Shown one piece after another: positions 7,837 to 64,000 of a DNA stretch of 64,000 nucleotides. A program made the position numbers and the translations under genes. The first letter of the stretch is position 1. Every line of letters begins with the position of its first letter. The stretch covers positions 40,060 through 104,059 of the forward strand of contig JAKMXF010000013.1 in assembly GCA_024704765.1 (NCBI GenBank), read 5' to 3'. The stretch comes from Oopsacas minuta (taxonomy: Eukaryota > Animalia > Porifera). Under the pieces are notes generated by a model, which worked only from the letters and a program-made list of their open reading frames with translations, had not been told where the DNA came from and did no database searches.

Positions 7837-8387
7837 CAGTCGACTCCGGTTAATCGGACCACTTTTGTCCAGAGTAAAGTGGTCCGATTACCCGGGGTGT
7901 CCGATTAACCGAAAAATCTTATTATCATTATTTTATTGCTAGATAAATATTTCTAGTCGATGGTAATCCTATTGCTAATTGAAAAAAGAAGTAATTGATT
8001 GTTGCTTAAGTGATCTTTCAGCATTTAAGTGAATTTTGTCAGCACAATCATCAATTTTAGTTCTGTCTAACCCTTGCTCAATAAAATATCTTTGTAGAAG
8101 ATAACAGCTGCGTTTTGCTCCATTGTTTGTTACTTTTTGTTGAATTTCAGGACATGAATCTCATCATCAGAACTTTCAATTTCATTAACATTTCTCCTTT
8201 TTCTTTTCATTTCCTCAACAATTTCTTCGACATTATCAAAGTTCTCAGGTTCGAAACAGGTTGTATCGTCATGATCTATTTCATCATATTCTTCTCCATT
8301 CACAACTTCCTCTATGCCTAGACTAATGCATTCGTTTGTTACAGGTGTTTCATTGTTCAGTAAGGTATTGTTAGAGAACCCAGCCTT
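7837..8387 (-). mobile_element. pogo/Tigger element, 3' end, cut by N-gap
   Basis: TA + CAGTCGACTCCGGTTAATCGGAC terminus; minus-strand KAGF followed by an acidic C-terminal tail typical of Tigger transposases. Confidence 0.7.
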
Positions 8388-16619: not shown

Positions 16620-17118
16620 GAGTTGATTCTTGAGCCTGTAATCAAATCTGCTGGTTCATCCTTGTTCAAAAACACACCCTAGATATTCCAGCAGGACTCT
16701 GCGCCAGCGCATGCCTCGAAAGCAACTCAATCCTGGCTTTTAGGGGAAACTATTGACTTTTTGTCCAAGGAAGAATGACCTCCTTTGAGTCCAGATTTGA
16801 ATCCACTTGACTATTCCATCTGGGGGACTTTACAGAGCAGAGTCTGCGGTACTACGCATGGAAATTTGGAATCTCTGCGGAAGGCTTTGGTTACAGAATG
16901 GGAGAAAATTCCGCAAGAAGAACTCCGTAAATATGTCCAACGGTTTCAAGGACGACTTAAAGCTGTAGTAAAGGTAAGAGGCGGTTATATCGAATAGAAT
17001 TGGATAGGAAGATTCATTATAATATCCTTTAACTGTCAGTGAAAATTTGGATTGAAAGAATAACTAGTTTAGGAAAAACCAGAGTATATTCGTGTATCAG
17101 AACTTAATTGTCACCCTG
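16620..17118 (+). mobile_element. Tc1-like element, 3' part (5' part at 33422-33597)
   Basis: FQQDSAPAH and SPDLNPLDYSIWG...GGYIE; terminal GTATCAGAACTTAATTGTCACCCTG + TA. Confidence 0.9.
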
Positions 17119-32492: not shown

Positions 32493-33421
32493 ATGATAAC
32501 TCCCGTATTTAGACCTGTAATGATGCTTGCATCTTTTCCGTTCATCGATGAGATTGGATTGAAGGAATTATACTTAAGGATAACCATCAATCGTGACAAT
32601 TGTATCGATTGGTTGAGGGTTCATGAATTATTAGCAAGAGGTATGAGATGTAATGTAGGGCAAACATGTCGGAAGGCGTATTTCTAAGGTGCACGAAGGG
32701 AGAGGTTGGAGATGTCCTGAAAAGGGTTGCAAGAAATTTGCATCCTACGAGTAGGATCATTCTTTAAAGGATCCAATATTCCTCTTACTCAGTTGGTGGA
32801 ATTTTTGTATCTTTGGGCAGAAGGACTACAAAGTACACATTTCTTAACCCTAAATCTTAAGTGATCTCCAAACACCATCACGGATTGGAAAAATTTCTTG
32901 AGGGATATGTGTGTGGAGAAGTACCTCTCTAATTCCGAACCAATCGGAGGGCATGGACACATCGTTGAGATCGATGAAAGCAAGTTTGGGAAATGAAAGT
33001 ACCATCGAGGAAGGCAACTATCGGGAAAATGGGTGTTTGGTGGGATTGATAGAGTTACCAAAGAAGTTTTCACGGTCACAGTTGAAGATAGATCAGCTTC
33101 TACATTGATTCCCATTAAAGAACAATATATCAAACCGTCTACTATTATTCTAAGCGATGAATGGGCTTCATACAATCTTATTCCACCTGCTACATTCACC
33201 CATTTGGCTGTTAATCATAGTATCCAGTTTGTGGTCCCTGGGACAGAATTCACAAACAAACAAGAGAAAGCACTTGGGGGGTCAAGCCAAGAAAAAGATG
33301 AGAAATTCCATGACCAGCAATCCCGAGCTCCTGGATACATACCTCGCTGAATATTGCTGGAGAGACAAATATGGTAACAATCCATTTCACACCTTGCTAA
33401 TAGAAATAAGAAACCAATATA
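32493..33421 (+). mobile_element. Merlin / ISXO2-like (IS1595-related) transposase remnant
   Basis: WRCP..GC zinc-finger-like region, IGGHGHIVEIDESKFG, WVFGGIDR, IILSDEWASY and VNHS motifs; stops and frameshifts; ends at a TA where a Tc1 begins. Confidence 0.88.
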
Positions 33422-33597
33422 AAGGGTGACAATTAAGTTCTGATACATAGTTCCAATTGATCTGATGCGTTTCCAATATATTATATTACCATTTCTATCA
33501 TTTATATTCTAACATATATGTCTTCCTGTTATGCTCAAACAGTAATCTAAATCTATATACGCATAAAATCAGAAATTTCAACATGGAAGTAAAGAGG
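33422..33597 (+). mobile_element. Tc1-like element, 5' end (3' part at 16620-17118)
   Basis: (A)AGGGTGACAATTAAGTTCTGATAC matches the reverse complement of the 17118 terminus except the first base; ATG GAA GTA AAG AGG runs into the N. Confidence 0.85.
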
Positions 33598-35013: not shown

Positions 35014-35680
35014 CAATTGTTTATAGGTCTTGTCACCCATGCACCTCTCGCTTATATCGGTGGTTTACCATGGACCTTACAAATCGTACACACCATACCA
35101 TTTTGGGTTGAATCGTAGTCCATCCAAGTATATTCATTCTTCCGAGTAGGTTTATAAACTAAGTTATCCTTGTAGGCTCGCATTGTTTTAGCTGTTTTAG
35201 AAGCACATGGAGTGGAAACAATCGCATCTTCCTCTGGTAGTTGTGGTTCAGACTCAGATATATTGTTACAATCAGAAATTTTTCTTTTAGTTCCTCGAAT
35301 GATAACAAATTTATCCATGTGGTAACACTGGGTTAATCAATTATTACCTATGCGAAGTTTATAACAAAAAGAATTTTTCCGCTATATTATATCTCAAGAA
35401 TTTGTAAATCACTAATTATAGGCGGATGGATAGTAGGAAGCTATACTTTCCAACATATGTTATTATTTCGCAGTTGCAAATAGTATGAAATGTGATTCAG
35501 GTTTCCCACATGTTGTTTATTTTCACTTCAAATAGTATTTTTATAATGAATTGATATTCTAATAATTTATCCATTGTATAATATATTACGATTAATAGTA
35601 TATTTTATGAGATTTTGGGGGGGAAACTGAAGTGTTTGGGGAGGAAGCTTCCCACCCCACCCCCAGTAGATAGAACCCTG
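35014..35680 (-). mobile_element. hAT element, 5' part (3' part at 51388-52804)
   Basis: Terminus TAGATAGAACCCTG at 35667-35680; ORF from 35318 MDKFVI...WMDYD...GMVCTIC (TTF-type zinc finger start). Confidence 0.85.
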
Positions 35681-42785: not shown

Positions 42786-42789
42786 TCCA

Positions 42790-44377: not shown

Positions 44378-44504
44378 CGTTATAGTATTGGACTACTATA
44401 GACTACTAATAATCTGAAAAATGGTCGGTTAGTAAACAATACTGTTCGATTTATAACGACTTCAATCGAAGTACTGAGGAGGAAAAAACTTTTGAGACAC
44501 CCTG
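44378..44504 (-). mobile_element. Tc1-like element, 5' terminus (partner of 63412-64000)
   Basis: GAGGAAAAAACTTTTGAGACACCCTG + TA matches the reverse complement of the 63412 terminus with one mismatch. Confidence 0.85.
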
Positions 44505-46011
44505 TAGAATGGACCAATTTTTACACTCATAAGTCATAAAATAATGAACTAATGGTACTGAGCCGCCCGCCCGCATGCATGGTCAGGAGGACCACAAGTG
44601 GGGCTGAAACAAGTTTCTCATTAACAGTGGCATTATAGTCAGAGATTCTTTCTTATTTGATGCAATAATTTTTCTAAGTATAATACATTTTTAATTATTC
44701 AACTTATATTATTAGCTATATGCGAATAATTAGAATTACAGTCTCATGTATAAACAGGGAGATTTATTTGAATTTAGTATATACAGAACAGGTCACAAGT
44801 TGAATGTATCGGCCGAATTCGTTTACAAATACCGTCAGCTGATTCTAATTGAGCCGAGCCTACTCATACATAATTCAGATTAACTAGGCTGGTCTTCCTC
44901 GTTTATGGCTGGATACTAACCAGGAAGTTATACTAACTCAAACCTTGATTATAATAAATATTATTGGTAATTTGAACATGAAGTTTGGAATTTTGATTAA
45001 GGGTGATGTACGGGGAATACACAAAATCGTAGAATCGATCAATTAGAAATCATTAGTTTTACTTGTAGCTATATATTCCCTTAGTAAGTATATGCAATAT
45101 TAGATAGTCGGTTTCACTCTAACATAATATAGTAGTGCTTTGAAAGTAGATCTGATTTCGAGGAATATTCTACTGAAAATCCCTGGATTTGCTCGGATTG
45201 CTGATAGTTTATAGCTAATTAGATCTTATCATTTGTTAGTACACTGTCAATTGTTGCAGGAAACTCATAGATATAATATATAATATATAATATATGACTG
45301 TATGTGTAATCCCCTCCATTTCAACACGCACAATCCCAAACAATAACAACTTTTTTGAAAGTAGGGAACCCTCCACATGAATTTGTAAGCTCAAAGTGGG
45401 TTTGTTTTAGCATCAAATAGTTCAAGGCAGTTAGTAATAAACTAAAAAATTAGACAAATTTGAAAAGATATCTCATAAGAATGTGAACAATATTTTATAA
45501 GTGTAATTAGTTGAAATTTCAATTTCGAAAAAATAAAAAATATTTTGAAAAGAACAATATTTTTAGATATTCAGAAACATCCCTATGTATTCTATTATGT
45601 ACTTTAACCAAATCAAATAATGGGTATGGCATCAAAATGTAAATTTCAAGTGTGCTCAATTGAATCCTGTGCTAACTTCTCACTTGTGCGTAGTTCCACC
45701 TAAATGCAAACTATAGTATGTGTTCTCACAAAATCAACTTGAGAAGGTCATTTCAGGGTCGAAGTGTGTACTAGAATCAATAAGGTGAGCGGAGTCAGAC
45801 AAGAGGTCAATCGATGGAGTTAGGACAAGTTTGGAGAAAGGAATGTTGTTATATTCCTATACATTCCTGGGCTGGTAGGGAAATTTACTGGCCTAAATAA
45901 TTACCACCTGCAGTTTGATAATATAAATAACAACATCTACATGTAAAATATTAGCTGGTGGGAAAATATATAATCATCAATATAATTGGGAAGGTAATAA
46001 TGAAGGACTAC

Positions 46012-46143
46012 CTTTGCAAAGCTCCCATCGCCAATTTCATTAAGGAGATCCCATTTAACCAGCGGATTCGAACTAATAAGATGTTTAGAGATATCTTCTG
46101 GCCGAACAGGGCGTGTAGTAAAAAATTTTCTGAAGAATGCCAT
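46012..46143 (-). CDS. SLK: SLK/STK10 kinase, first coding exon (44 aa)
   Basis: MAFFRKFF...NPLVKWDLLNEIGDGSFAK, then a phase-0 GT donor (AAG|gtagtc); resembles the SLK/STK10 N-terminus (MxF...NPxxxWEIIGELGDGAFGK). Confidence 0.88.
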
Positions 46144-48399
46144 AAAAAAGAAGGCTATAAACAATATGTGAAAAAATATTACGAATCTGGAGATATAAAT
46201 ATGATTTGTAACCAGATGTTTTCTTAGTCAGGGGCTATACATTATTTAATTTCTTAGCTAGGACAGCCCGAGTTATTAGACCTCGGGTGGGGAACCCTAA
46301 CTTTAGATGTAGAGCATAACAACACTGGTTAGGTGAAAATACAGGTTAGTGTTGTTCAAATATCATAAAATTAGGAATGCCGGGAGTGGATCCAAAGAAT
46401 TCCGCCAAAGGGGGCTAGGACAAGGAAATATTCGGTTCCATACATATATAATGTGGGACGCAACCTTTCAACCACTAAAGTAGAAAAATACATGGCCACC
46501 CATAAGCAATTTTGAGGGCTACTATAGCACTAGTATTAGAGCATATATTATATATAACAAATGATACCATAGGAAAAAATCACATTTGTGGTCCGATGGC
46601 CTTAGTGTAGCGTGGCCCAGGTCGAGAACCTTAGCCAAATATAGTTCTTAAGGAATTTTTCAGCAGTGGACGCCCTCCCATAGACTGTAATAGATCCTGC
46701 CCCCCTGCTATAGTCCGTGACAACAAAGGGTCCATCATGGACAACTGGATGGGAAGAGCTGTCCTAATATATAGGTATAATGCAGTACATGAGGTAATCT
46801 TCAGGAAAAATAATAATAAAATAGGCAATAATTTCAATACTAGGCTCCAACGTAATAGTAGGCACATTTAAACACGTTTGGGACAATTGAAAATTGATAT
46901 TGCCCAATTGTCTTAAACAGCAGGCATAAATTTGTTCATTGAATCTTTAGACATCAAAATTTCTGAAGACATATCCACCAGAAATACAGCTTTTCATGAT
47001 AAGTGTATACCGTACCTGCAGAATTATTTTTGCCATGGTGGCGCATGAAAGCAAATATGCTAGAAACAATGCAAAAGAATTCATAGACTAGCGGGAGTGG
47101 CAGATCTTGCACACTTTGTGTTCGAGTGAAGAACACTTCGGCGATCTGTAATATAGGTTATACAACAACAAACACCATATATCAATTAGTGTTGCACGAA
47201 GAAGGCCGGACAATGGTTAATGTGAAATACCATGAAGCACCAATGGAAACCTTCATGGCATAATAAATAATTAAAGGCTGTGTCTAGAGTGCTGGTGTCA
47301 TATAGTAATCTCTGTAACTATCCAACGCAACGGGCCGAAGACTATATTAATTTAGTTGTCTTCCGGGGGGGAAACTATCATGCAGAATAAGGTTCCCCTA
47401 TCTTCCACGCCTGTAATTATCCCTCCGTGAAGAATACTGCATAGTATTCTTCCCCCTATCTCAATTGTATTGTAATTCACTGACCTACATTATGGCTCCT
47501 ATACTGAAACTTAAAGGACTTTAACTGCTTTTGAACAGGGAGAACCCATTAATCCTAATGAAAGTCGTCAATAGTACGCACAATTAGTTTATGTTTTGAA
47601 ATTTCCTATTCCATTAGACCCTCGCTAACCGAATAGGGCTTGAAGGTTAAACAACATTGAAAAACGGTGAAATTTTTTACAAAGACCTTATTGAATTCAA
47701 ATTCTATAGCGTACAGATATATACCACTATATTACATATGTTGGCAGCCTTTTCATGGTATATACAATTTTCGAAAGCATGTGCCCCTAGATCCTATAGG
47801 TTTCTTTCAATACATTTCGCTAATAGGAACGAAGTATTTCGAGTTACAATACACTTTAAGTAGTGTATTGTAACGCAAAATATTTCGTCCCCAATAGTGA
47901 AATGCAACACTGAGTTTGAGTCACAATACACCCTCGCTAATCGGACCAACTGTTCCGATTAGCGAGGGAGTGTTGTAACTCAAATTACCATAGTTGTCAA
48001 GTCTCACGGATCGAAAGTGAGACTCATCTATTGGAACATCATCCCGGTATAACATTTATCATTGTCCTCACTGTATATTCTCTGAGGAAATTTGAGTTAT
48101 TATAGTGATTTATTGGGATTTGAACAATGTTTCGCTATTTTGAGGGTAGATATCCTATCAGCCTTCCAATATATTTCAAAAATTGTAAAATTCCATTAAT
48201 TATAATTAACCAAATCTCACGGATGGATTTTCCAAAAGTTGACAATTTGAGTATGAGTTAAATCCAATTATTTTTACATCACAATCTATACATAAAGCTA
48301 TGGGCCTGATATAAATTGTTAGTCCAGAGACAGCAATATATATAGCAATATATTAAGGCAAATTTTGCTAGTTCAATAACGGTTTTATATGATACCTGT

Positions 48400-49230
48400 G
48401 TGATTGATATGTAGAACTACCCACAATCGACGCTATACACACATTTTTCTGGTCGAAATGACGTAATATGATTACGTGATATACGCTCTGCTCTAGAAAT
48501 TCCCAAACTTTGGCTCTGTTAACAGTAATATATGCTACTTTCGGTTCCAGACTATTTACTGAGTGATCCAGAGAGGTTTTCTAACAAAATATCAGAGTTT
48601 GTCATGGTAAATTTCGCGCGAGTTCCAAAGTTGTAGTATTTAGTGAGCATGAATGCCGCATTTCTTCGATATTCATCCAAAACTAGGTCATCTTTAATGG
48701 TATGACCAGATAATCGTGCCAATATTTAGTTTTACTCGATTTCCCATGCCCTTGTATACATATTGATATGATATCTCTGCACATTATGACATAATCTAGC
48801 GTATACCCATATATTGCAATATTCAAGATTACATCATAATGTGCACATATAGGATATCAAAATGAATTACAAGGGTAGGGAAATCTGGTATAAACTATAC
48901 ATTGGGACGAGCAATTCGCTCTTAGATTGAAGATTACCGAGTTATGGATGAAAATTGACAGAAATTCTCCATCCATGGTCACTCAGTATTACAACTCTGG
49001 AACTCGTGGGAAATTTAACGTGACAGACTCTGATATTTTGTTTGAAATCCTCTCAAGATTACTCAGTGAATATTTTGGAATCGAAAGTGGCATATATTAA
49101 AGTTGACAGAGCTTCAAAGTTTGTGAATATAGGGAGCAGTGTTTATTACATAATCATATGAATTCATTTGGTACTGAAAAATGTGTTGATAGCGTGGATT
49201 GTGAGTAGTACTATGTATATATAACAAGTA
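48400..49230. repeat. long imperfect palindrome / foldback (~400-bp arms, centre ~48800-48825)
   Basis: Reverse-complement blocks such as GGAACTCG.G.GAAATTTA...ACTCTGATATTTTGTT, CATAATGTGCA and AAAAATGTGT..ATAGCGT.GATTGTG.GTAGT, colinear from centre to ends. Confidence 0.85.
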
Positions 49231-51116
49231 CAGTCGACCACGGTTAACTTGAATACACGTTATTCGAGCTTTCACAAACTGGAACAAACATCTTTTTCCC
49301 TTGAAAAATCTGACATGATCCAATGCAAAATTGTCGGTTAAATTGAACTCTTTTAATTAGAATTTCACCAATTTGAACAAACTCGAATTTCACTTGAATG
49401 ATATTACAAAATATATTCGTTCGATAATTCGAACTTCTACAAAATGTAACAATTTGATATTTCATTGATAAAGAATTAATTCCATATAAATCCACCCAAG
49501 ATAATTCGAACGTCAATATGACTTTCATTTTTATTATTACTATTTACTAAATGAAATGTAATTATTGTGTTTGGTATGTGTATTTCATCTCCATGTTTTA
49601 GTTATCATGTAGAGTCTTTTTAAGGATATCTACATATGCTCATAGTCCATAGAAATATAAAATGCATGATACTCGCAACCCCTCACCGTCACCAAATCTG
49701 ACCAGTTTTCATATAATCTCAAAGTTACAAATGTTAGATTTGCTGCTCTGAGAAAACAAAAGATTATTTTGCAAACCATCCAGTCTTTTACTATTTCAAA
49801 CAACCAACAACACCCAAATGATCAACAAAATGCATGATACAATCCAATAAATTCTACTACATTTCTCATGAAGATATTGCATAATCTATAAATATTATCT
49901 CGTTTATTGTCTTATTTTTTTGGGGTTCTAAAATATTTATTATGTAATGAATATATTGATATAATAATATATTGCTGCCCTGGTCCAAAAATTTCAATGA
50001 ACACTATTGCATTATCTATAGAGTGCTTTGGTTTTGAGTAAGTCTACTAAATATATTCCGAAAATTTTCACCAAGTTTGTTAACTGCTTTACAGTAGCTG
50101 CAGAATAAGTCTGTCGACGAAATATATATTTGGTTGAGATTTTGTGAATAATTCTAGAGACAAATAGGACCAGATACATCATTTAGAACATAAAGATAAT
50201 GCCAAAAGGTATGATAGATGTAAAAATAGTTCTTCAGGGAAAATCTGTTGAAGTTAATAAGTGGTTTCTAATTTTACTTATAGCATTGGCCTAGCTAGCA
50301 TTTCCTCTTTGTGTTGCGGTGAGAATGTAGGATGTACCAGTGGGGTTGCTAGCAACCCCGATAATACAGAGATTGCTAGCACCCTCAGTAACCCGGGTTG
50401 CTAATAAGGCTGCCAGCAACCCCAAACAACCCCCTAGCTAAGTCTATATCGTACAGCCAATTCGAACTAAATACGTGTTCACTTTAGTTGTATATTTGAC
50501 CGATTTTCTGTATAGCTAGACAAAAAACTTGGTATTATTCCAAAGTATAGGTTGGTGGATTACGACAATGTCATCAGAACAGAAAATATGTGTGATCACT
50601 TAGCATCAAGGTTTTTAAAGTTTTTCCTAACGTGTCAATTTATAATGTGAAATTTCATGAACATATTATCATTCTTTTGATATACTTTTTCATCTGAATA
50701 CTATTGAGGGTAGGTTGATTATGTGTCTAATATTTCTTTTAAAAATAATTATTACTTTTTGAAATCTTTTGTGACATATTTCAAAATGTCTTAATTATTT
50801 GTTAAAATTTACTACCTATTTTCGTACTACTATTAACAAGACGTAATTGTATATACAATCCTTTCTCAGTCCATAATCACTAACGATAATTCTCCGTATA
50901 TAATAATCTTATTTTTCATTCTAATTACATAATTGAGACTCTTATCTTATACTTTCAATTCCGGCCTAAATTCGTTTCAATTTCACAATATAATTGATTA
51001 CTCTCAATTTTTTTCTTTCGTTCAATTCATAAATTTTTGTTTATCTATCGAGTAATACAAACATGTTTTCATTTCAAGTTACAGCACCCTCTAATTTATC
51101 TACTCAACTCTTGTAG

Positions 51117-51387
51117 GGGAGTCCTATTCAATTTTCCAGCAATCTCCTTTATCGGTTTCCAACTATTCACCTCTCGTAACAACAATCTATCTATTAGTGT
51201 CAATTTTTCAGACATTCTACTCAATTATAAATTATCTCTGTTCACTAAGAAAGCTCTAGAAACAGTTAAAGAATCGTTTGATTCTCAATCACCAATTGCA
51301 TGTGAGAAAACTACCTTGGATGTCAGTTTCATAACCATTGAGGAGTGTTTAAATGAGCTTGCAGATAATGATAGGTTTACAATCTGG
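51117..51387 (+). CDS. 5' part of the host exon interrupted by the hAT element
   Basis: CTAAT branch-like motif, pyrimidine tract and TGTAG acceptor (AG at 51115-51116); open frame GVLFNFP...NDRFTIW ending exactly at the hAT TIR. Confidence 0.5.
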
Positions 51388-52804
51388 CAGGGTTCTATCT
51401 AGGATGTTCAATTTGGGAGGGAAGCTTTGAAATCCTTAGTAACCAATTATGAAAGTATTCCAACCTTGAAGCAGTGTTCCCCCTAAGCCAAGTTATGGCT
51501 CACATTTGGTCTGCATCAAGGCCTGTTTTATCGGCCGAAAACTATCTAATAGTGACAAAGTTCCTGCTGGAGAATACAACACTTTTCAGAACATACAAAT
51601 GAAGCCCAACATCGATGTAAAATTAGCATTGAGTGTAGAAAATAAAATTCGAAAGAATATAATAAACCAGTACTCCACAGGGAAAATCGCGCAAACTTTA
51701 GATTATTATTGGCTAAGGAATTTTGGAATATTCATTTTGATCGGCTGCAGATCCGAATTGACCGGCCGTCGGAATGCCAAATTGGCGTTTTGGGTGGCAG
51801 GCCGGCCGGTCAAAACGCTTAGGGGGAACACTGCCTTGAAGTAAACGCCAAACATTTAATTTAATTCCTAATAATGAAGATTTCCATTGTTAGTAAACAT
51901 GAAAGGGCCGCCCACAAATTGGTTTTTCTAATTTTCATTCCTTTATAATGTTCCAATACTGCCTCTAAATTTTCATCAGATAGGTGATCAGGACCTTCAA
52001 TACATATACGCATACAATAATCAAGTATCTCTTCACTCATTCGGCTGCGAAGTCTCGTTTTTATTAATTTCATATTGCTAAAACTCCTTTCGACTGTGGC
52101 TGTTGTCACTGGTAATACTTCCAAAATAGAGGCTATCTTTGCCAAGTTTGGAAATGCAGCATATATCTCTCCGTTTCCCAGCAGTCTTGAGAGTATAAAT
52201 TGTAAGGACCTACCTTTGTACTGTAGGAAAATTAAGTGTCGAAACAATTTCTACTCTGATTCAGTTTCTTTGGCTTCGATGTCAGGCTGTGATATACCTA
52301 CATCTCCTTCTACATTGATCCTTTGTTTATCACTATAAAAATCCGTGAGTGTCTTAATCTGTTCCATTCCGTACTCTGATAATTCTCCTTCTGTACCAGG
52401 AAGATGGCGAGGGGGTCAAAAACAGACATGGCTGAAATGAGATCAGTAGACTCCATCCTGACATTAATATGATCTATGACACTTTTGGAGGTATGGTTGG
52501 TACACCTTGTAAAGAAATTCACTTCTCTTCTTCCAATACCACGATGTGTTTCTCCCCTAATTGAGCATCACCAGTAAAACCAAAGATGTTCCTTGAACCA
52601 TGTGCTGCTTGTTACATCTTCTTCGAGCTCCAACAGCCGTTTAGTAGTACTAGCAACCATCAATGGCACACTCACAAGATCAATATCCTTGGCTTGTAGA
52701 CTTCCTTGCAATTTCGCTACGATATGAAGAACATCTGATAGCATGTAGATACATGCGACAGTCTTGTACTTCACTAAGAGAGTTGCAATTCTATGTGATT
52801 CTGC
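51388..52804 (-). mobile_element. hAT element, 3' part (ZNF862-like)
   Basis: Terminus CAGGGTTCTATCTA at 51388; dimerisation-domain motif LPVTTATVERSFSNMKLIKTRLRSRM...IEGP; MLSDVLHIVAKLQGSLQ. Confidence 0.92.
51472..51833. mobile_element. hAT-type MITE (362 bp) nested in the hAT 3' region
   Basis: Perfect 16-bp TIRs CAGTGTTCCCCCTAAG and perfect 8-bp TSD CCTTGAAG. Confidence 0.95.
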
Positions 52805-52805
52805 N

Positions 52806-53301
52806 TACGATTTGTAACACCATTCTCATTGATAATCTTACGAACATATGATTGAGAGATATCGAATTTTCGAGCCATTTTTCTGGTGGAGACTCCTATT
52901 TTATTGCTAATTTTGCACAATAGAGATCGCCGGAGGCTCTTGGGCATTTTGACAGACTTGCGACCGCTACCCAACTTCCTGTTTAGGGTTCCTCTATTCT
53001 TGATAGTAGAAATGGTGTTGTAGATAGTAGATCTTGCGATTCCAAACGTCAAAAAATGCTTAACTGTATAAGAAATCCCATGCTCATAATTTTTATGAAA
53101 AAATTGTCCAATAATGTGTCGCCGTTGTGTCACTTTCAAATGATCCATCTCCAGATGCTATGTTCGAAAATAATCGAAAATGGTTTGAATTTGAAATCTA
53201 TATACAAATAATGCATTGGTGAACAAAGATTTATGAATTTGGAAATATTTCGTTGTTGTGGTGAACTATAAAATATGTCTAAAATTTTAGTGCTCACCCG
53301 T
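52806..53301 (-). mobile_element. Tc1-like element, 5' part, cut by N-gap
   Basis: MDHLKVTQRRHII...ARSTIYNTI...GSGRK...STRKMARKFDISQSYV HTH region; TTTTAGTGCTCACCCG-like terminus. Confidence 0.8.
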
Positions 53302-53719
53302 TATTTTGATTACTATAGATGGAAGTTATGAAAAATAAGCTAAAGGAAACAACTGATTACTACCAAAACACATTTATAGTGTAGGATATTATTCTATTCT
53401 TAGTTTTGGATGATGGATCATTGAGCTAATTTAATAGAAGTATGGGTGGAATTTAGAGTTTCGAGTTAGCAAAAACTTGTTCTTGTGAGTAAGTCCAAAT
53501 TGTGACCATAGCATCATTACTTGCAGATATTTGGAAGGATGGGACCGTTTCAGAAAATTATCGATCCGATCCCGATGCCCGATCATACTGTCAAATGGAT
53601 TGACGATCCTTTCCGATCCACAAAATGATCTAGATCCAGATGGTACAATATTAGATAGAAAGAACCTAATGACTAGTCGGAGTAAACGCAAATATGTACG
53701 AATTAAAACGCCAATAATC

Positions 53720-54190
53720 TGTGAATATATACTATGTTTATGTCCAGAAATGATTGAACAAAATGGAGGACCTCCAGGGCTGATTGTTGGCAAAAAGGGG
53801 TATTTTGTGCTTGGCTTGGACATTGTGGAGTCTTGGACGAAATTAACACCTATGACGACATTATGACGTCATTGTCACCTTTTTGGAAATTCAAAAAATC
53901 ACACTATTAACCACTGCTCAGCCAAAAATACAAGATAGAAGTTCGAAATCTGAATCACAGTTACCACCAAATGAGTTAAATGTCCTAACGTCATGATTCT
54001 CATCAAATCAAACTCATCATGTTGTACTCCGGTCATTATGACTATGCAAAAAATAGAAAAAATTCCGAATTTCTTAAATACTCGAGTAATCAAGTGCTGA
54101 GATTAGTAACCAAAAGCGACATAGCATCTCCTGTGTCACCACAAAAGGCCATTGAATGAAATATGGATGGACCATGGGTAATAAAATCTT
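53720..54190. repeat. dispersed repeat, copy 2 (see 22740-23200)
   Basis: Colinear shared blocks with copy 1. Confidence 0.8.
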
Positions 54191-55122
54191 TCTGCTAAAT
54201 TATAAACTCAAGGCACGAAGTGATGAGATTATCCTCTCTAGCAACCAAAAACATCAAGGAATTTAGCTGTTTAATACATAATCGAACTTGAGGCACTAAG
54301 TTGTCGCGTAGCCACCTAGCAAGCGGAGCACGTTAGTAAGTATAAACTTTGATGGAAATGATTCCACTCGTGGAGAATTATCCCAAATACGCTGTTTTCA
54401 TGATTATCTAGCATCCAAATTTAGCGGAATCAACTGTAACTGTATCAGTATTCGGTTATGGTGCTAATCATGAATACTAATATTCTGAGTTGTTTGATAG
54501 GTCTATTAATGAAGAAGTATACGTATAATACGTATTATAGGCCCCAATCTACAATTTTTGTCACGTAACATCTATTGGGCTGATTTCTGCAATTTATATT
54601 TTACATATAAACGGAAGTTCTCGAATTGTCAATGAGAAATATCAGCTTAGTTGACCAAATTATATGATTGGCCTACAAATACAATAGAAACATTTCCTTA
54701 TGATAAATTTTCTATATATAACATATACTTGGCACTTAACAACCCCAGCATCGAATCTTAATACGTGTCCTATTAAACATAATATAGTAGAAACGTCGAC
54801 ATAATACGTATACGCATAGCATAATATACACTAGGGAAATGACACCCATCAAATAAAGTACCATCAGATTTATACATTCATATGGCAGATTATTTCGAGT
54901 ATGTTGACTTGTCTTTTTTCCAAAATTGTTTCCGGGTATGAGCAGCATTTGTAACATTATTTGTGAACACTGTACATGTAGATAAGACAAACATGGAGAA
55001 AAAGATGATCAGTATCCAATATTTCCAAAGGAATTCCCATCTCATCTTCATAGCCAAGTAAACATTATTTATGAACCATAAAAATTACATATATGTGTAT
55101 AAACACCCTAGAGTCGATTATA

Positions 55123-56702
55123 CAGTTAGGACAAAAGTAAAAAAACAATTCAGAATTGCAAATATTTCGTTATATTCTTATCACCCTTGTAACTAACATA
55201 TTCTTATACATCGATGCCTGTCAATCTACATAAAAGAATCTTGTTCACGCATATTCTATGGTTTATTACTAACAGTTATTGTATACATCAGAGTAATTAC
55301 AGTCTGTAACATAATTATTGAGAATTTCCGACATAATCTCAAAGAACCAATTTTCTTTCAATCATACTTTACAATATCATTTACATGTAGAATTAGTTAG
55401 ACATATTCTTTCTTAACTGTTTTGACCATTTATCAACTTAGATTGCATTCTTCAATACTTAATTTATATGAAGAATCTATTGACCACGCCAACATTTTTC
55501 TCAATTCTTGAATAATAACTTGTAGATTCAAAATATTCTAATTTTTAGGTTGTAATCCCTTGATATGAGTCAACAGCGAAAGAGACTACAGATAGAAACA
55601 TTATTTATCAGTTTTGGGCTCTGCTATTCAGATTTCAAAGAAACTTGGCGTCAGTGTGGCTACGGTTTATCGAGTAAAATCAAGAAAACAACATAATGTT
55701 GGCCTGGAACATCGTAAGAGAGCTGGGAGGCCATCTAGCCTTAGATTATCTGTTAAGAGAAGCGTTACTCAACAGATCAGACGTAAGCACTATCTTTTTT
55801 TACGTACTTCAGCATCACTTGCCCCCGTAAACTCTCACACGAAACAGTCTGACGCGCGATGAAAGATCTTGAGTATAACAAAAACAAACGACAAATAAAC
55901 CAATGATAAGCGAGAAAAATCGACTGGCAAGGCGACAATGGGCTAAGAAGTACAAATATCAAGAAAGCGTGGTACCAAACAGTATTTATTGATGAAATGG
56001 CGATTTGGCTTGCTCGAAGAAGGATCAAAATGTGGACAAAATCAGGCCAAAACGAATAGTCCCGACAACTAAGAATTCTCCAAAGATCAATGTTTGGGCG
56101 GGGTTTAGTTAAATGGGAACATTTCCTCTATGTATTTTCACCGGAAATATGAACAGTCAAATGTTTGTTGATATTCTAGAAGGGCATTTGTTAACATAGG
56201 CAGAAATCTTCCACCGAAATGAATGGCGTCTTGTCATGGACAATGACCCAAAGCACACCTCTAAACTTGTCAAGGCTTATCTTGTTCAGAACATCCCGAA
56301 TCATCTTCCTTGGCCTTCCCAGAGCCCCGATATCAACCCAATAGAAAGTGTTTTCAGTTGGGTAAACCGAGAACTTATAAAATTGGCTCCTAGGACGATT
56401 TCAGAGCTAAGGAAGAAGCTTGAAATTGTATGGGCTAAGATAACCCCCGAATTTCTAGAGCCATATTGTGATTCGATGCCACACAGATGCCAGATGGTAA
56501 TAGAATCTGGTGGTTTGGCTATAAATTATTAACTAGTGATGTTTTTTCAACCTAAATCACATGAATTAGTAATCATTCAGGAAAATTGCTTCTTTTCTAG
56601 CTCATTAAATAATCTCAATAATTATGTTACAGACTGTAGATTCTAGTTTGATATACTTAGTATTAAATACAGTAAGTGGTCGATACTTTTGTCCCTTAAC
56701 TG
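55123..56702 (+). mobile_element. full-length Tc1-like element (1580 bp), pseudogenised
   Basis: TIRs CAGTTA(AG)GGACAAAAGTA with TA flanks; ATG 55565, AGRP, FIDEM, DNDPKHTS and WPSQSPDINPIESVF motifs. Confidence 0.92.
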
Positions 56703-57487
56703 TATGTTAGCAAGTCCTCTATTCTGATAGAGAATTCTACAGGGATTCACCAAATGACAACTGAAAGTAATATTTCATCTAGCTGCGAAGCATTTAGTAA
56801 TTTTGGTATATTATTATTATGTCATTTAGCTGAGATATTTGTATGCAGTAGCGTTAGCTGACGCATTGCGGGCAAACTGATTTTACTTTGCACTAGGTAA
56901 TGCTTGACATCTATTTAAGTTGCGCCATGTAATGTCGCACCAATTTCGACTTCTCTCCGGCGTCACCTTTGCGCACAACTGCTTCTACAATGTTTGCATT
57001 TTTATGCAAACATTGTAGAAGCGGGAATTTTAGTTTTTATCAGGCTTAGTAGGTAAATTAAATCGAGAAGGAATATTACAAATATTGATCAGTGTAAAAT
57101 TTCTACAGAAGTATATACCCTTAAAATTCGAATTTTTTTCCCTATCTAATCTATTATGAACAATGCGGTTAACACGTACTAAAATAAAATGTACAATCAG
57201 ATAAGACTGAATATATTATTCTTCCCAAAAGATCTAAATGTACAAACCATAAGATGTACTTGCACAGTATATGTCCCCCCACACAATATCAAATCTGATT
57301 CAAATCACATCATAGTTTCATCTTATCGTTAGAAATCTGGATAATAGTAAACTTCTATTGAATATTAAGGAGTATTCGTATACTATGAACGTAGAATCAT
57401 GCTGATATTGAAAACTTCAGTTTATAAGTACTCGGATAAGTGCCTATAATAAGACTTACCTCGGTTAATGGGTACATTTTTGTCTCC

Positions 57488-59893
57488 CATGCATAGGCGC
57501 CAAACGGGTATAATTTCCAGGGGGCGGAAGCATTATGTAATTGTGTTGCTAATAATTCTCTTTATAAATGCAAACAATATAGTATATAGAATTATACATT
57601 AATTTTGACTCCAATTAATAGGGTCACATCGGGATCACAGATTTTTTACCCGTTTAAGTGGAGCTATTCAATATTTCTGACATTGTCCTGTTGCTGGCCA
57701 ATTACCCGATTAACCGGTGGTTAAGCTTAACTGGTGGCCCAATTAGACGTAGTCAAATGCAGTATATTCCAATTGCAATAATTGAATATTGTAATGCGTC
57801 ATTATACACTAATTGGACTAAATAATTGCTTAGTTCAGTGATATATAATTATAATAATGTAGTTATTTCAGTTCAGTTCTTGTTTTCTTTGCAAACTTCG
57901 TCTTGCGAGTAGCGTTCCAATCCACGAATTAGTTGATGACATCAACCATTGAGAGCTTCTTGACGTATTCTGAATTGACCTTCAGGGTAGCGCGATGGTT
58001 CATCCATTTCTGAGTCATTATTGTCCTCAGCCATGTCTTAATAAACCTCAAGACGAGAAGGATGTCTTAGCCTCACAGCTCGTTGCGGGGAGGATGAGAT
58101 ATATTCTGACGAGAACATCCATGCATGAACATACAGTCTGTAAAATATCATACTGTTGTAGCGCAAGGAGACACTCTTCCACTAAAAATTTGGTATTATC
58201 ACCATCGCTGTACTGCAGTTTCACAAGATTGTGACAACCCTTTACATGAGCCTTTAACTACGCAACAGACTCCCCTTCAGATCTTCATTATATCTGGAAC
58301 ACACATTGTCCATGTAGACACTGTTCGAATTGCAGATAACGTCTTCCAACTCGGCAATGAACTTGAGCTCCTCTATCGTGTACCTAAAAACCAGAATGCT
58401 TCTTTGAAATCAATTATAATATGATACACAAGTCTATCACCTTTCGACAATCTATACTGCAGCCTTTTGGAACATGGTCTCGTAGATCTTAGCCTGAATC
58501 CTGTCAATTGCCTCCTACGAAAACCTACAGGTCACAGTTTTTCCCCGACGAATCCACTCGGCAACGCTTGCGTCCTGTTGGCAATTGGCTGTTCCAACTT
58601 GATCTCGATCGCTCTTGCTTTTAACGCGTCGTAGAAATCCTGTACTTGTTCTTCTGTTCCCATGCTGGTCATACTTCCAATGATGTGTCTATATTGTTGC
58701 GGACGAATCCAACTGTAACTGGTCGTCCTTGAATCTCAGTGTTAACAGGATGTGCTATTACATAAATCCTCTGCAGCAGTCTGGCACAAAAGTACGTGCG
58801 AATTTGAGGTGCGTCTTAACGTAGGAGGTAGCCAGCCCCTTGTTCTTTTGAAGAGGCCTCAATGATTCCGTCCTTCAGCCCTATCACATAGTCTAAAATG
58901 GATGGATACATTTGGCGAACGCATTCATGGCAGGCGCTCTCAGTACCCAGGGGGTAGGTAACACACAAGGGCCTGGAATTCGTTGTGGACTGCGGAACAG
59001 CCAGACGCCCTCTTCCTGAGCCAGCATCTATTCTTCTTCGCCCTGATACACCACCAGTTCCTTCAATTCGTGCCTACGGAAGAGGGAGTATTGAATGAAG
59101 AGTATAATTTCTTTGATGTATATTTGAATTTTTTGCAAATCCGAATGGCTTGCAACTGCATCTTGACAAACAAGATTCAGGTCATGTCCGCTCCATAACT
59201 GTGAAATGCAAGAGGATAGCCATTCTTTAAGATTGTCGTCACTCCATTTTTGGCCCCGCGCATTACTATGGCTAGCTTGCCCACGACATTGTTCAAGTGT
59301 CGGACCGTAGGTAATTCTGTTGCATGTTGGCGCAACTTGTTCTTGTTATGGGCCCTCAAGTCATTGACTCCCTTCCAGGAATCTTTCCAGTCTGACCCAA
59401 GCAACTGCTGATTTTCGAGGCTCTCTTTTTGCCTCATATAAGTAAGCAACAACTTATTCTCATCGAGTCCCCAGCCGCACGAACCGCACGTAGATGAGTA
59501 AGTGGTAGGATTGTAGCGAAGCCATTTGAATTCAGACTTCCAAATGTGATGGAAAGAGCAATTTTCTGCAGTTTTGGATACGATTCGATATAGAAGTCAT
59601 AAGAATGGTTTGGTCTGTACTACTGCTAGAGATATCCTATAATCCTCCAGGCTTCTTATCGAAGAAGAATGCGATCTTAGTATGCATATCCCGATTGAGT
59701 TCTGGCTGTTTTTCTACATGTCGCTTAATCACAAAATTGAAAATCTATTATATTAAAAACAGAAATATTGTATATATAATTAGATTTACACTGGTGACAT
59801 AGATCGTTACACTACAATAGATAAAGTAATTATAAGGAAATCACAAGTGGGGCAGGGCCTTCCCGCCCCTTGGTTTTCGGCGCCCATGCCATG
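57488..59893 (-). mobile_element. degenerate hAT element (ZMYM1-like)
   Basis: Imperfect TIRs CATG(G)CAT(A/G)GGCGCC; AIVMRGAKNGV...YPLAF block and an LPATSCEA...SFS dimerisation-domain remnant; no TSD found. Confidence 0.75.
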
Positions 59894-61360
59894 TGAGTAA
59901 CTGTTTACCGATTTTAGTAATTAAAACACCAAGTCAAAATGTAAATCCGGAATTTCGTCAGAAATAGTTTGACACAAATGAACCAAAATTTGTGTGTCAG
60001 ACAAAGGTGGGAAATACACTTCGAATAAGGAGTATTTAAGTGTTAGAATCATTTACTAAAGATATGTGATTATTTCCACACCTGTCCTATACAAATCAAT
60101 GCATATTATTGCAATGTTTTCATTGGTCAAGTAATTTACTCATTTGTTTAATAAGCCTCGCACAATAAATGTTTCAAATTTATGAAAAATAATAAGTTAT
60201 TGGAGATATTTTGTTGGTTGACAAATTCTACAATATACATAGAATTATTATGTGAATAATATGATCAAACACATTTAGTACCTTTGATGAAAATAGAATA
60301 TTGTGCTAGAGATTGCCTCAAAAGTTATTTCAGGTAACCAGACACGTTCATTAAAAATTCAATATTTATGACATTCCAAATTACTCAAACTAATGATTTT
60401 CTAGAATATCAATTCATCCGTACTTCTGAAGGAATATTATCGACAGATGATAGGACGAGTTTCATTAAAGTGTGCTACCATCTTGCACAAATTAACTAAA
60501 AATTTGCTTCTGCAGGCGCGTTGCGTTCGCAAACGCCATAACTCTATGAAATAATCAGAAGGAACTAGCATAACTTCGTACGAAGGGCGAAGCTCACCAA
60601 GGACAGTTTTATCAAAGATATTATAGATATTTTATCATAGATATTGATCATGACCTCTTTGAGAAATAGTACTAGTACGTATGATTATAATGAATATCAT
60701 TTGAAATCTACAAACTAAGGTAGTAATTTATATCTCTTGATTGGTTTCAATTTTCTCCGTTCCTGGTGTATTCCCACCTAGCATTTACTAAAGTTGAAAG
60801 AAACTTTGAAAGTATGATCTCTAACCTACCATAGCTTCGATCTCTGAGTTCAATATCATTCGTGGTAAGCGACTATTCGAATATAGACGATTATTCAAAT
60901 AAAGCGTTACTTGAATTATGCGAAAGGTCCATTTTAATATAAGAAACGTACTAACATGCAGGTTCCAACTCAAATTTGGGCTTTTGGAGACAATCGAGGG
61001 TCAGCATATTTCGAAGCTCAAATGCGGGTGACTTGGGACCTATAACAAACCCCACCTAGCCCATACTTAGCGAACACCTGAATATCAATAACGCGAATTT
61101 TGCCCCACACGAATTAGTACTTGACCCACATGCAAAACGGGGCGGGCGCGGCCACACTTCCAGACCCGCGAAGATTGCCGACTAAAAATAACAATGAATA
61201 AAACAATTAAAAATATTGACAGAATGGACATAAAGGTGAGCATAACATATAATAGATATTCTTGTATAGAATAAATTATAGGATAAAATAGTTTAACTCA
61301 GGAAAAAACACGCCTTTAGTAAATCAAATTAAAGAGAAAAAAGCAAAACTAATAACAAAC

Positions 61361-61822
61361 CTCTGGGGCCATCCAATATGGAGTTCCGATGAATGTGTCA
61401 CGTTTTGATATGGTCCTTTTATTAATACAAGATACACCAAAATCTGCAAGACGGATAGTTCCCTGAGAACATAATAACATATTTCCAGCTTTAACATCAC
61501 GATGTATTATTCTACGAGAATGTAAATAACTGAGAGCTTCAATTAACTGCTTAGTAACGCAAACAATTTGAAGTTCACTGAAACCATGATCCAATTCAAT
61601 AATGATGTCGTCTAAAGCGCCACCTGGGCAAAATTCAAGAAAATACCAAAGTTTGTTGTCAAAGAAGTATGCTTCATACAGTTTGAGAATATAATGATGG
61701 TCACAATCAGCAAGAATGTTGATTTCAATCAGAAACGCGTTCAATTCAGAATTATCTGCTAATTCTATAACCTTTGCAGCTGAAAATACTTGTGGATCAA
61801 GTTTTGATTGAGCCTTATGGAC
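61361..61822 (-). CDS. SLK: SLK/STK10 kinase, internal exon covering subdomains II-VIII (154 aa)
   Basis: Acceptor tttctag|GTC CAT AAG and donor GAG|gtttgt, both phase 0; AAKVI, EFCPGGA, HRDVKAGN, LADFG and RDTFIGTPYWMAPE match SLK/STK10. Confidence 0.93.
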
Positions 61823-63411
61823 CTAGAAAGATTAAAAAATTGAGATTCTGCAGAAGAGACAACAGTAGAGAGCCAAGAGCTATAATGGAGAAAATAAACA
61901 AATAAAGGGGCGTAATACACAAACAGCGTTAGGAAAATTTCAAATATAATTTTAGAAAATGTAGAAAAAGTAAAATTCTGTGAAATCCTTTGTCAACAAA
62001 CTTAAAATGGGAATTTCAATAATAATACATTTGAGGTTGTTGCATAGTATTATGGGGCAAGTGTCGCCTCGGAATATATATTTCAACAAAGATTACAAAG
62101 TGATGACGTCGTAATGACTTGTTCACAATTTACACATAAGATTTCAAATTTAGTTTTTTTGAAAATTTGTTTAACTGATAAGAGCAAATTATTGAATATG
62201 TGAATCCCTTATATCATTTGACAAGAAGCCATGTATATTTAAAGTCAAATTTCGATCAGTATTGGAATCCAGATATTTATGAGGCATGCTGTTTATGACA
62301 ATCAATTTCGTATCTACAAATATATCGAAAATCAGGCCAAACACGTATCAAATATTACTTGTACATAAATTTGATATTCCCAATCGATTTTTTACCATCG
62401 AATTACTATAAGTGAAAAGTTTTGCTTCTGTAGCTAATATGAACATTCCATTCCGCTTCATCATTAATTCTTTCTTGTTTGTACATATTTCTTCCAGATA
62501 TATAATTTCATCGTATGGTCATGTTGGAAATTTGATGGATGTGAAGCTAGCGCTGGATTCGACTGAGCTCACTTCAAATTTAGATTTGATGCCGTTCCTT
62601 TTATTGGATTTAGTTGAAAATTACAGAACAAATTGAAGACATGGACGTTTAAGAATGTCTAAAAATATTTGTACTTTTAAAAGCAAAAAAAGTGTAATTA
62701 TTTCAATGCCTTGTGAAATATAGATTTTCAGGGTTGAGCAAATTTAGTTCGAAACTACTCTCTTTCATGTGTAAATCCAATAAAGGTACATTGGTAATGT
62801 TGATTATAATGATATTAATCAGTTTAGCGTTCAGAATTATCACCTCAAACTTACGTTTATCCGCGATCAATTAAACATTAAACCCAGGTAATAATCTGTT
62901 TAACGAAATTGTTGCTATTTCATACGTCTATGGAATATAACTGAAAGGTGTTAAGCCGAGAGGTAGTATAGCAGCTCAGGCCTGTGGGTCATGTTTCCCC
63001 CTAATTAACTAACACATTACTCTAGGGATCCGAATAAACGGACCCCGCTTATTAATTTCTTGGTTTTCTTCCACCTCTGAGCTTATTCCAATTCTCCGTG
63101 CTAGCCAGCGGTAATCTAGTATGTATGTAGCAATTTTGAAATTTCAAATCTCTCACTCAGTGATTAATCACATCCGCAACCCAGGTTGCAACATAGAAGA
63201 AGTCCGTTATGTTTATACTTTAGGGTGCTGTTAGTTAGAAACTTTTTTCAGCTTAACCGCACGAATATCGTCATTATTTCACCATTTACTCAATGTAATT
63301 TAGCTACAGGGTGTATAAACTAGCAAATAGTTCATTGTAAATGATTTTTTCTTAGTACAATATGGTATAATATCAAATTCAACACGAGTTATTCTCATAT
63401 TTATTATTATA

Positions 63412-64000
63412 CAGGGTGTCTCAAAAGTCTTTTCCTCTTATGAATACCACTATAAAAATATAGAATTTCTTAGATAGATTCCTCTAATTATTTGCCTATA
63501 TATTCACCATAAAGTTTTATACATGAATTAATTCGACTTGGCATCCCATCAACTAAATTCTCAAGTATCGATGGGCTAATCCCATTCCATATATTTCCAA
63601 ATATTTTCCGAACTGTGTTAAATTTGTGGCGGGCTTTCCCTTGTCCAGCACTGCTTGCATAATAGACGAAAGATTTTCGATGAGATTTAAATCTGGGGAG
63701 TTACTAGGTCAAACACCTTTCCCCAAATCCAGGTAGATGCTTTGAAAGCCATTTCTGGGTCCTTATGGCTGTATGGGCAGGGGCGCCATCCTGCATGAAA
63801 ATTGTCTCGGACATCTTTCGACACATTTTCCTTTGGGTAAGTGGGACTCTAGTCTTTCTACGCTTAAAGGTAGGGAGACAACACTTCTCCAGGATTTCAT
63901 TAATATAGTAGTCAGTATTCACTGAGCGTTTTGGGGGGATGAAGTGTAGTTCTGATAGCCCTGACCGGCTCATCATTCCCCAGACCATCATTTTCGGGGG
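63412..64000 (-). mobile_element. Tc1-like element, 3' part, runs off the window
   Basis: TA + CAGGGTGTCTCAAAAGTCTTTTCCTC terminus; MVWGMM and FMQDGAPAHTA motifs. Confidence 0.9.

What the first reader, a model, noticed from the sequence alone, without database searches (positions are those of the whole stretch)
46012..61822. SLK kinase exons are in the wrong genomic order
Both exons are on the minus strand, so exon 1 should have the higher coordinates, but the ATG exon (46143-46012) lies ~15 kb downstream of the next exon (61822-61361). They splice exactly in phase 0 to give EIGDGSFAK|VHKAQ, matching SLK GDGAFGKVYKAQ. Taken literally this would need trans- or back-splicing or a second gene copy. 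The exons sit in different contigs, and the Tc1 split between 63412+ and 44378-44504 shows the right-hand contig belongs to the left of the other, which restores normal order. Annotation on this scaffold would break or miss the gene.
Basis: partly seen in the sequence, partly recalled or inferred. Interest (0 to 1): 0.75.

Follow-up and report, generated by a model that had tools for sequence, protein, structure and literature searches.

The report
Kinase exons misordered by scaffolding error
The first two exons of a glass-sponge SLK-type kinase gene look out of order only because the published draft assembly strings the small contigs of this scaffold together in reverse order, so this is an assembly fault that breaks the gene model, not unusual biology.

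Summary

Four different transposon copies are each cut by contig ends. Their two halves lie at the far ends of neighbouring contigs. Each fits together only if the right-hand contig is placed to the left: c8 to c7 (Tc1), c7 to c6 (hAT), c4 to c3 (Tc1) and c1 to c0 (pogo-like). In full-length copies elsewhere in the genome the halves keep the same orientation and order, with 615-981 bp of interior missing here. No junction is coherent in the order shown.

So the contig chain is reversed while each contig keeps its strand. In the corrected order exon 1 precedes exon 2, with an intron of about 4.4 kb that holds a Tc1 element.

The likeliest cause, by inference, is mate pairs used with the wrong orientation.

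The gene stays fragmented. The window ends at the scaffold end, the second half (C-lobe) of the kinase domain was not found in the assembly, and the PKK tail is on scaffold C166. The public annotation holds two truncated models. Biological interest is low; the result is useful as a quality warning.

The parts
46012..46143 (-). SLK-type kinase exon 1: ATG, N-terminal MAFF... segment and glycine-rich loop EIGDGSFAK, with a GT donor at 46011-46010
61361..61822 (-). SLK-type kinase exon 2: the rest of the N-lobe through HRDVKAGN, DFG and GTPYWMAPE, with an AG acceptor and a GT donor
63411..64000 (+). Left 591 bp of a 1,356-bp Tc1 element (family 'Tc1-C'; its transposase is on the minus strand), cut by the end of contig c8, which is also the scaffold end
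44380..44507 (+). Right 134 bp (element 1223-1356, with terminal inverted repeat) of the same Tc1 family, at the very start of contig c7
44377..44377 (.). Single-N contig join c6|c7. In the order shown it puts a truncated mariner next to a Tc1 tail, which is incoherent
52805..52805 (.). Single-N contig join c7|c8. In the order shown it puts hAT interior next to the interior of another Tc1 family, which is incoherent
51388..52804 (+). First part of a roughly 2.7-kb hAT element: terminal repeat CAGGGTTCTATCTA at 51388-51401, dimerisation domain on the minus strand at 52250-51864, and a nested 362-bp insert. It runs to the right end of c7
35014..35680 (+). Last 667 bp of the same hAT element, from the left end of c6 to the inverted terminal repeat at 35667-35680. 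Full copies put it about 981 bp after the c7 part
33420..33597 (+). First 178 bp, with left terminal repeat, of another Tc1 family ('Tc1-E'), running to the right end of c4
16620..17120 (+). Last 501 bp of Tc1-E (transposase C-terminus and right terminal repeat), from the left end of c3. Full copies put it about 635 bp after the c4 part
7835..8387 (+). First 553 bp of a pogo-like element, running to the right end of c1. Its other end starts contig c0 at C13:29838, right after an N and outside the window
62396..62464 (-). First exon of the public gene model P0001 (MMKRNG...SNSM). It has no kinase similarity and is most likely spurious
59640..59744 (-). Last exon of the public gene model P0001. 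It is not kinase-like and is most likely spurious
52806..53304 (+). Last 499 bp of a 1,354-bp Tc1/mariner element ('Tc1-B') at the left end of c8. Its first 843 bp are not in the window, so the true left neighbour of c8, where the gene should continue, is unknown

Best explanation
This is an assembly artefact. Scaffold C13 of the Oopsacas minuta draft genome is a chain of small contigs (1.4-11.6 kb) joined by single Ns. At the four joins that could be tested, neighbouring contigs are written in the reverse of their true order while each keeps its own strand; put another way, each contig is flipped in place relative to the scaffold path. Placing c8 (52806-64000) to the left of c7 (44378-52804) puts exon 1 upstream of exon 2 on the minus strand. 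The intron is then about 4.4 kb: 1,504 bp, a 1,356-bp Tc1 element of which about 631 bp are unassembled, and 1,588 bp. The gene is an ordinary linear SLK/STK10-family kinase gene.

Shown: the exons, their register, their uniqueness, and the four reversed junctions.

Inferred: the cause. The genome paper reports Nextera mate-pair libraries and SSPACE scaffolding. Mate pairs read with the wrong orientation make a scaffolder place B before A without flipping either contig, but only when the two contigs together are shorter than about twice the insert size. That fits a chain of contigs whose neighbouring pairs sum to at most 19.8 kb.

Also inferred: RNA-seq reads could not bridge the exons in the order shown, so the gene predictor added unrelated end exons.
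For: Exons and family. Single copy.

Junction c8R|c7L: Tc1-C element 1-591 and 1223-1356, both on the plus strand, about 631 bp apart in at least 20 full copies.

Junction c7R|c6L: the hAT terminal repeats face each other only in this order. In at least 7 full copies the c7 part comes first and the c6 part follows about 981 bp later. After the join and removal of the hAT, a 330-codon open frame runs through on the plus strand.

Junction c4R|c3L: Tc1-E element 1-178 and its last 501 bp, about 635 bp apart in at least 15 copies.

Junction c1R|c0L: pogo-like element 1-555 and 1171-1729 of the full copy on C222, and c0 starts exactly after an N.

Control: among all 81 pairings of a contig right end with a contig left end, terminal-repeat matches appeared at c8R-c7L, c4R-c3L and c1R-c0L, all reversed neighbours, plus one 31-bp c6R-c4L match lying 1.3-2.4 kb inside the contigs. 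None fell on a junction of the order shown. The hAT repeats lie outside the 700-bp windows and were found.

Methods of the assembly: Nextera mate pairs, SSPACE, Pilon, GapFiller, and TopHat with a 5-kb intron limit.

Broken annotation: P0001 and P0072.
Against: Four of the eight reversed-order junctions (c6R|c5L, c5R|c4L, c3R|c2L, c2R|c1L) could not be confirmed. The missing 593 bp of the mariner at c6R is nowhere in the window.

The Tc1-C family has other orphan halves elsewhere, for example at C39:10175 after an N. The Tc1 evidence alone therefore does not pair c8 uniquely with c7; the pairing rests on it together with the exons and the scaffold-wide pattern.

Exon 1 is short. On its own it finds no kinase in the PDB.

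No reads, RNA or syntenic contig of a relative could be examined. The cause, mate-pair orientation, is untested, and at least one single-N join elsewhere (about C295:98400) looks coherent as shown, judging by coordinates only.
Confidence: 0.93

Rival explanations
1. The ORF at 46143-46012 is not the gene's first exon. The real exon 1 would lie in unassembled sequence beyond the scaffold end, and the glycine-loop match would be coincidence or a relic.
For: Exon 1 alone gives no kinase hit in the PDB. Its tblastn E-value in about 130 kb is only about 0.09. The scaffold ends 2.2 kb upstream of exon 2, so there is room for an unseen exon.
Against: The alignment to SLK-type proteins ends exactly at the residue before the one where exon 2 starts. 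The ORF starts with ATG and MAFF, like the MAFANF of P0005. A GT donor follows the last codon in phase 0. It is the only such orphan match in the genome. Independent transposon evidence puts it about 4.4 kb upstream of exon 2 on the same strand.
Confidence: 0.04
2. The genomic order is real, and the mRNA is made by trans-splicing, or the exons are scrambled as in back-spliced circular RNA or permuted genes.
For: Read literally, the scaffold shows exon 2 upstream of exon 1 on the coding strand. Other notes of this scan report 'permuted' genes in this genome; these were not tested.
Against: The two exons are separated by unsequenced joins. Four independent transposon copies show that neighbouring contigs of this scaffold are in reversed order. 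Correcting the order makes the gene ordinary.
Confidence: 0.01
3. The two exons belong to two different copies of the gene (tandem duplicates or a pseudogene fragment), each lacking its partner exon in the assembly.
For: The gene is clearly incomplete in the assembly: the C-lobe was not found and the tail is on another scaffold.
Against: Exon 1, exon 2 and the PKK tail each occur once in the 61.5-Mb assembly; the next-best match to exon 2 is 42% identical. All three are open and conserved. In a related sponge the exon-2 and tail orthologues are recorded on contigs of identical length, 1,686,895 bp.
Confidence: 0.02

Closest known systems
SLK / STK10 (LOK) family of STE20-group kinases (Drosophila Slik, Xenopus polo-like kinase kinase)
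   Same: Exon 2 is most similar to the STK10 and SLK kinase domains, with all N-lobe and catalytic-loop motifs. The exon 1 register matches the family's N-terminus and glycine loop. The family's PKK tail domain occurs once in the genome.
   Different: In this assembly the gene is in pieces: exons 1 and 2 are misordered on C13, the C-lobe was not found, and the tail is on C166. This is a property of the assembly, not of the protein.
Scaffolding errors from mis-oriented mate-pair libraries or repeat-ended contigs in SSPACE-type scaffolders
   Same: The breaks coincide with single-N joins. Contig ends lie inside dispersed repeats. Order is reversed while strand is kept, which is the geometry expected when outward-facing pairs are treated as inward-facing. 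Only small contigs are affected.
   Different: I could not inspect reads or library settings, so the cause is inferred. Some single-N joins elsewhere appear to be in the correct order.
True exon scrambling or trans-splicing (for example circular RNA back-splicing, ciliate scrambled genes, spliced-leader or genic trans-splicing)
   Same: Only the superficial picture is shared: a downstream exon lies upstream in the sequence as displayed.
   Different: No contiguous sequence supports the displayed order, and independent markers show that the order is wrong.

Membership tests
SLK/STK10 (LOK) kinase family | Kinase domain is closest to SLK/STK10 among the STE20-group kinases | tested here: met
   Exon 2 against the PDB: STK10 at E 1.6e-57 and SLK at 7e-53, against 3e-34 for the next family, MAP4K. 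Pkinase at 7.9e-34.
SLK/STK10 (LOK) kinase family | N-terminal segment with glycine-rich loop GxGxFGK immediately before VYKA | tested here: met
   Exon 1 ends EIGDGSFAK. BLASTP against P0005 aligns residues 26-44 to 31-49 (E 3e-5), and exon 2 aligns from residue 50. Support is modest because the exon is short (one search found no kinase).
SLK/STK10 (LOK) kinase family | Complete catalytic domain, including the C-lobe (subdomains IX-XI) | tested here: inconclusive
   No C-lobe in the window, in C13:30060-40059 or in C166:710-740 kb. None unattached anywhere in the assembly. The candidates on C55 and C356 belong to MAP4K-like and PAK-like genes. The likeliest reason is unassembled sequence.
SLK/STK10 (LOK) kinase family | C-terminal PKK (polo kinase kinase) coiled-coil domain | tested here: met
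   The only PF12474 locus in the genome is C166:718981-720174 (-), at E 1.6e-16. It is annotated separately as P0072. The orthologues of it and of exon 2 are recorded on relative's contigs of identical length. That it belongs to the same gene is inferred.
Mis-scaffolded contigs (assembly artefact) | The anomaly coincides with contig joins, and independent markers are coherent only in another order | tested here: met
   Four transposon copies are split across single-N joins, with their halves at the far ends of adjacent contigs. Order and orientation were checked against full-length copies.
Mis-scaffolded contigs (assembly artefact) | Read pairs or long reads contradict the displayed joins | not testable with these tools
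   No reads are available here. The paper lists Nextera mate pairs, PacBio and SSPACE.
Exon scrambling / trans-splicing | The permuted exon order lies on contiguous, verified genomic sequence | tested here: not met
   The N at 52805 lies between the exons, and the join is incoherent as displayed.
Exon scrambling / trans-splicing | RNA evidence for the junction | not testable with these tools
   No transcript data could be reached. The joined exon model was deliberately not searched.

The most novel reading that the evidence does not exclude
The displayed exon order is real and the sponge makes its SLK mRNA by trans-splicing or from a scrambled locus. The evidence makes this very unlikely. A more realistic, non-biological point is that the reversed contig order may be systematic across the published assembly and may break many gene models.
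Probability: 0.01. Interest if true: 0.8.

Novelty: not a real feature. Interest (0 to 1): 0.2.

Why it matters
The biology is ordinary: a normal SLK-family kinase gene. The practical point is larger. In this published glass-sponge genome, a chain of small contigs is written in reverse order with the strands kept. That splits genes, yields truncated models (here 212 aa and 377 aa for what is most likely one kinase gene), and mimics "permuted" genes and "inside-out" transposon insertions.

The genome paper draws conclusions from missing metazoan core genes, and this scan holds several notes of swapped halves or permuted genes in other pieces of the same genome. All such calls near single-N joins should therefore be rechecked against reads before they are read as biology.

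Tried and rejected
1. Mariner continuity between the left end of c8 and the right end of c6. Rejected: they belong to different families (about 23 copies against more than 260), and the missing 593 bp and 843 bp are not in the window.

2. A strict whole-chain proof. Four reversed-order junctions stayed undetermined.

3. The kinase C-lobe. Motif scan, low-stringency tblastn and two whole-genome protein searches found none. The candidates on C55 and C356 are a MAP4K-like and a PAK-like gene with their own N-lobes.

4. The true left neighbour of c8. Orphan first parts of Tc1-B exist (C339:1-413, C332:797995, C154:10938, C284:935), but none lies near a kinase exon.

5. Exon 1 alone against the PDB gave only chance hits.

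7. More of scaffold C13 and other scaffolds.

8. The joined exon 1 + exon 2 protein was not searched or folded; the exons were searched separately by reference.

9. The large representative-protein search was not used, because the family was not in doubt.
Full report
WHAT IS THERE

The window is the last 64 kb of scaffold C13 (104,059 bp) of a 61.46-Mb, 365-scaffold assembly. A 100%-identical public protein names the organism as the glass sponge Oopsacas minuta. The window holds seven single-N joins, at 8388, 16619, 26845, 33598, 35013, 44377 and 52805. One more lies just upstream, at C13:36862, and another at C13:29837. I call the pieces c0 to c8. The pieces relevant here are c6 (35014-44376), c7 (44378-52804) and c8 (52806-64000). 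Position 64000 is the end of the scaffold.

- On the minus strand, 46143-46012 encodes 44 residues from an ATG. It ends EIGDGSFAK and is followed by GTAGTC.
- On the minus strand, 61822-61361 encodes 154 residues. It begins VHKAQ, sits behind a pyrimidine tract plus TAG, and is followed by GTTTGT.
- Exon 2 is a protein-kinase N-lobe through GTPYWMAPE (Pfam Pkinase, 7.9e-34). It is much closer to STK10 and SLK (E 1.6e-57 and 7e-53) than to any other STE20 kinase (3e-34 or weaker).
- Exon 1 is short and finds no kinase on its own in the PDB. Against the SLK-type fragment P0005, however, it aligns residues 26-44 to 31-49 (E 3e-5), and exon 2 aligns from residue 50. The two exons therefore abut without gap or overlap, in phase 0.
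- Both exons are unique in the assembly. The next-best match to exon 2 is 42% identical.
- No other glycine-loop match exists in the window.

The exons were searched separately.

WHY THE ORDER IS WRONG

Contig ends in this scaffold fall inside dispersed transposons. For each end I asked which other end carries the rest of the same element.

1. c8R and c7L. 63411-64000 is positions 1-591 of a 1,356-bp Tc1 element, with terminal repeat TACAGGGTGTCTC... 44380-44507 is positions 1223-1356. Both are in the same orientation. In at least 20 full copies elsewhere the two parts lie about 631 bp apart in that order.

2. c7R and c6L. A hAT terminal repeat, CAGGGTTCTATCTA, sits at 51388-51401 with the element running right to the end of c7. 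Its inverted copy sits at 35667-35680 with the element running left to the start of c6. In at least 7 full copies the c7 part comes first and the c6 part follows about 981 bp later on the same strand. Pfam confirms the hAT dimerisation domain at 52250-51864. Joining c7 to c6 and removing the hAT gives a 330-codon open frame across 50998-51387 plus 35686-36285.

3. c4R and c3L. 33420-33597 is the first 178 bp of another Tc1 family, and 16620-17120 is its last 501 bp. In at least 15 full copies they lie about 635 bp apart in that order. A second, outer pair of 165-bp inverted repeats (31038-31201 and 17520-17682) nests around them.

4. c1R and c0L. 7835-8387 is positions 1-555 of a pogo-like element. 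c0 begins, directly after the N at C13:29837, at position 1171 of the same element. About 615 bp are missing relative to the full copy on C222.

In every case the right-hand contig of the displayed pair must stand to the left, with both contigs keeping their strand.

As a control I compared all 81 pairings of a contig right end with a contig left end. Terminal-repeat matches appeared at c8R-c7L, c4R-c3L and c1R-c0L, all reversed neighbours. One further 31-bp match, c6R-c4L, lies 1.3-2.4 kb inside the contigs. None fell on a junction of the displayed order. The displayed joins put unrelated truncated elements side by side.

The remaining four reversed-order joins (c6R|c5L, c5R|c4L, c3R|c2L, c2R|c1L) could be neither confirmed nor refuted.

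THE CORRECTED LOCUS

With c8 to the left of c7, the minus-strand gene reads as follows:
- exon 1 (46143-46012);
- an intron of about 4.4 kb, made of 46011-44508, then the Tc1 element with about 631 bp unassembled, then 63410-61823;
- exon 2 (61822-61361).

This is an ordinary arrangement.

THE LIKELY CAUSE (INFERENCE)

The genome paper (PMC10280926) reports Illumina paired ends, Nextera mate pairs and PacBio reads. Assembly used SPAdes, followed by SSPACE, Pilon and GapFiller.

Suppose outward-facing mate pairs are treated as inward-facing, or the reverse. A pair that truly links the right end of A to the left end of B is then read as "B precedes A" with no flip. The implied distance is acceptable only if the two contigs together are shorter than roughly twice the insert size. 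Neighbouring contigs here sum to 8-19.8 kb, within reach of Nextera inserts.

From my own knowledge of SSPACE, it writes a single n when the estimated gap is not positive and no overlap is found. I could not test any of this.

TopHat was run with a 5-kb intron limit and no discordant alignments. Reads that span the exon 1-exon 2 junction therefore could not have guided the gene predictor. This too is inference.

CONSEQUENCES FOR THE GENE

- The public model P0001 (212 aa) is exon 2 flanked by an unrelated 23-residue start (62464-62396) and an unrelated 35-residue end (59744-59640). It has no glycine loop and no C-lobe.
- The C-lobe of the kinase was not found. It is absent from the window, from the 10 kb before it, and from 30 kb around the tail exon. 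No unattached copy turned up in the assembly, even with a C-lobe-only query for which all 71 candidates were scored.
- The only PKK domain of the genome, the hallmark tail of this family, is a 398-codon open frame at C166:720174-718981 (-). It is annotated separately as the 377-aa "STE20-like" protein P0072.
- In a related sponge the exon-2 orthologue (P0002, 83% identical) and the tail orthologue (P0073, 77%) are both recorded on a contig of 1,686,895 bp. This suggests one gene; it is an inference from equal contig length.
- The O. minuta gene is therefore spread over at least two scaffolds, with a part missing.
- The true left neighbour of c8, where the gene should continue, is unknown.

IS THE PROBLEM WIDER?

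By coordinates only, the same Tc1 family has swapped halves on two other scaffolds:
- C78: tail at 32296, left part at 40759 running to the scaffold end;
- C25: left part at 113544, tail at 125099, both on the minus strand.

One single-N-like join at about C295:98400 looks coherent as displayed, so not every join is affected.

Unchecked notes of this scan report "halves in reversed/swapped/permuted order" on other pieces of this genome (s1-277133, s1-209429, s1-277147, s1-309868) and permuted MAP3K19 exons (s1-252725).

VERDICT

This is a scaffolding artefact, not exon scrambling. Biological novelty is nil. The practical value lies in flagging a probably systematic ordering error in a reference genome.

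Noticed in passing
window 50998-51387 and 35686-36285 (+): These two open frames become one 330-codon frame once c7 is joined to c6 and the hAT element between them is removed. It looks like a host or older-element ORF interrupted by the hAT. Pfam finds nothing in either part.
   Followed up: partly
G000:C166:718981-720174 (-) (L003:1252-2445): This is the only PKK-domain exon of the genome. It is annotated as a separate 377-aa 'STE20-like' protein (P0072). The 20 kb upstream has no N and no kinase exon and is full of Tc1/mariner copies, so either a very long intron or another misjoin lies there.
   Followed up: partly
G000:C78:32296-41454 and G000:C25:113544-125224: The two ends of the same Tc1 family lie 9-12 kb apart in swapped order and in the same orientation. 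This is the signature seen in C13. The evidence is coordinates only; the sequence was not inspected.
   Followed up: no
L037 (G000:C39:8675-11804), N at C39:10174: Another contig starts with the same 130-bp Tc1 tail right after a single N. To the left of the N is the N-terminal part of a different Tc1-like transposase. This is a second incoherent single-N join, broken at the same point of the element.
   Followed up: partly
window 51472-51833: The hAT copy in c7 carries a nested 362-bp insert that is absent from other full hAT copies. The insert is itself a dispersed repeat with many copies (query positions 85-446).
   Followed up: no
window 31038-31201 and 17520-17682; ORF 32997-33347 (+): A pair of 165-bp inverted repeats, 91-93% matched, brackets an IS1595/ISXO2-like DDE transposase fragment (Pfam 2.5e-10) once c4 is placed before c3. 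The Tc1-E copy sits inside this outer element.
   Followed up: partly
G000:C41:41476-41972 and G000:C324:330601-331097: Two scaffolds give identical scores and coordinate spans for the same kinase C-lobe exons. This suggests a duplicated or haplotype-redundant stretch in the assembly.
   Followed up: no
G000:C55:323207-342395 (+): A MAP4K (MINK/msn-like) kinase gene has its kinase domain split into three exons spread over 19 kb, with a 14-kb intron before the C-lobe exon. Introns in TE-rich parts of this compact genome can therefore be long.
   Followed up: no
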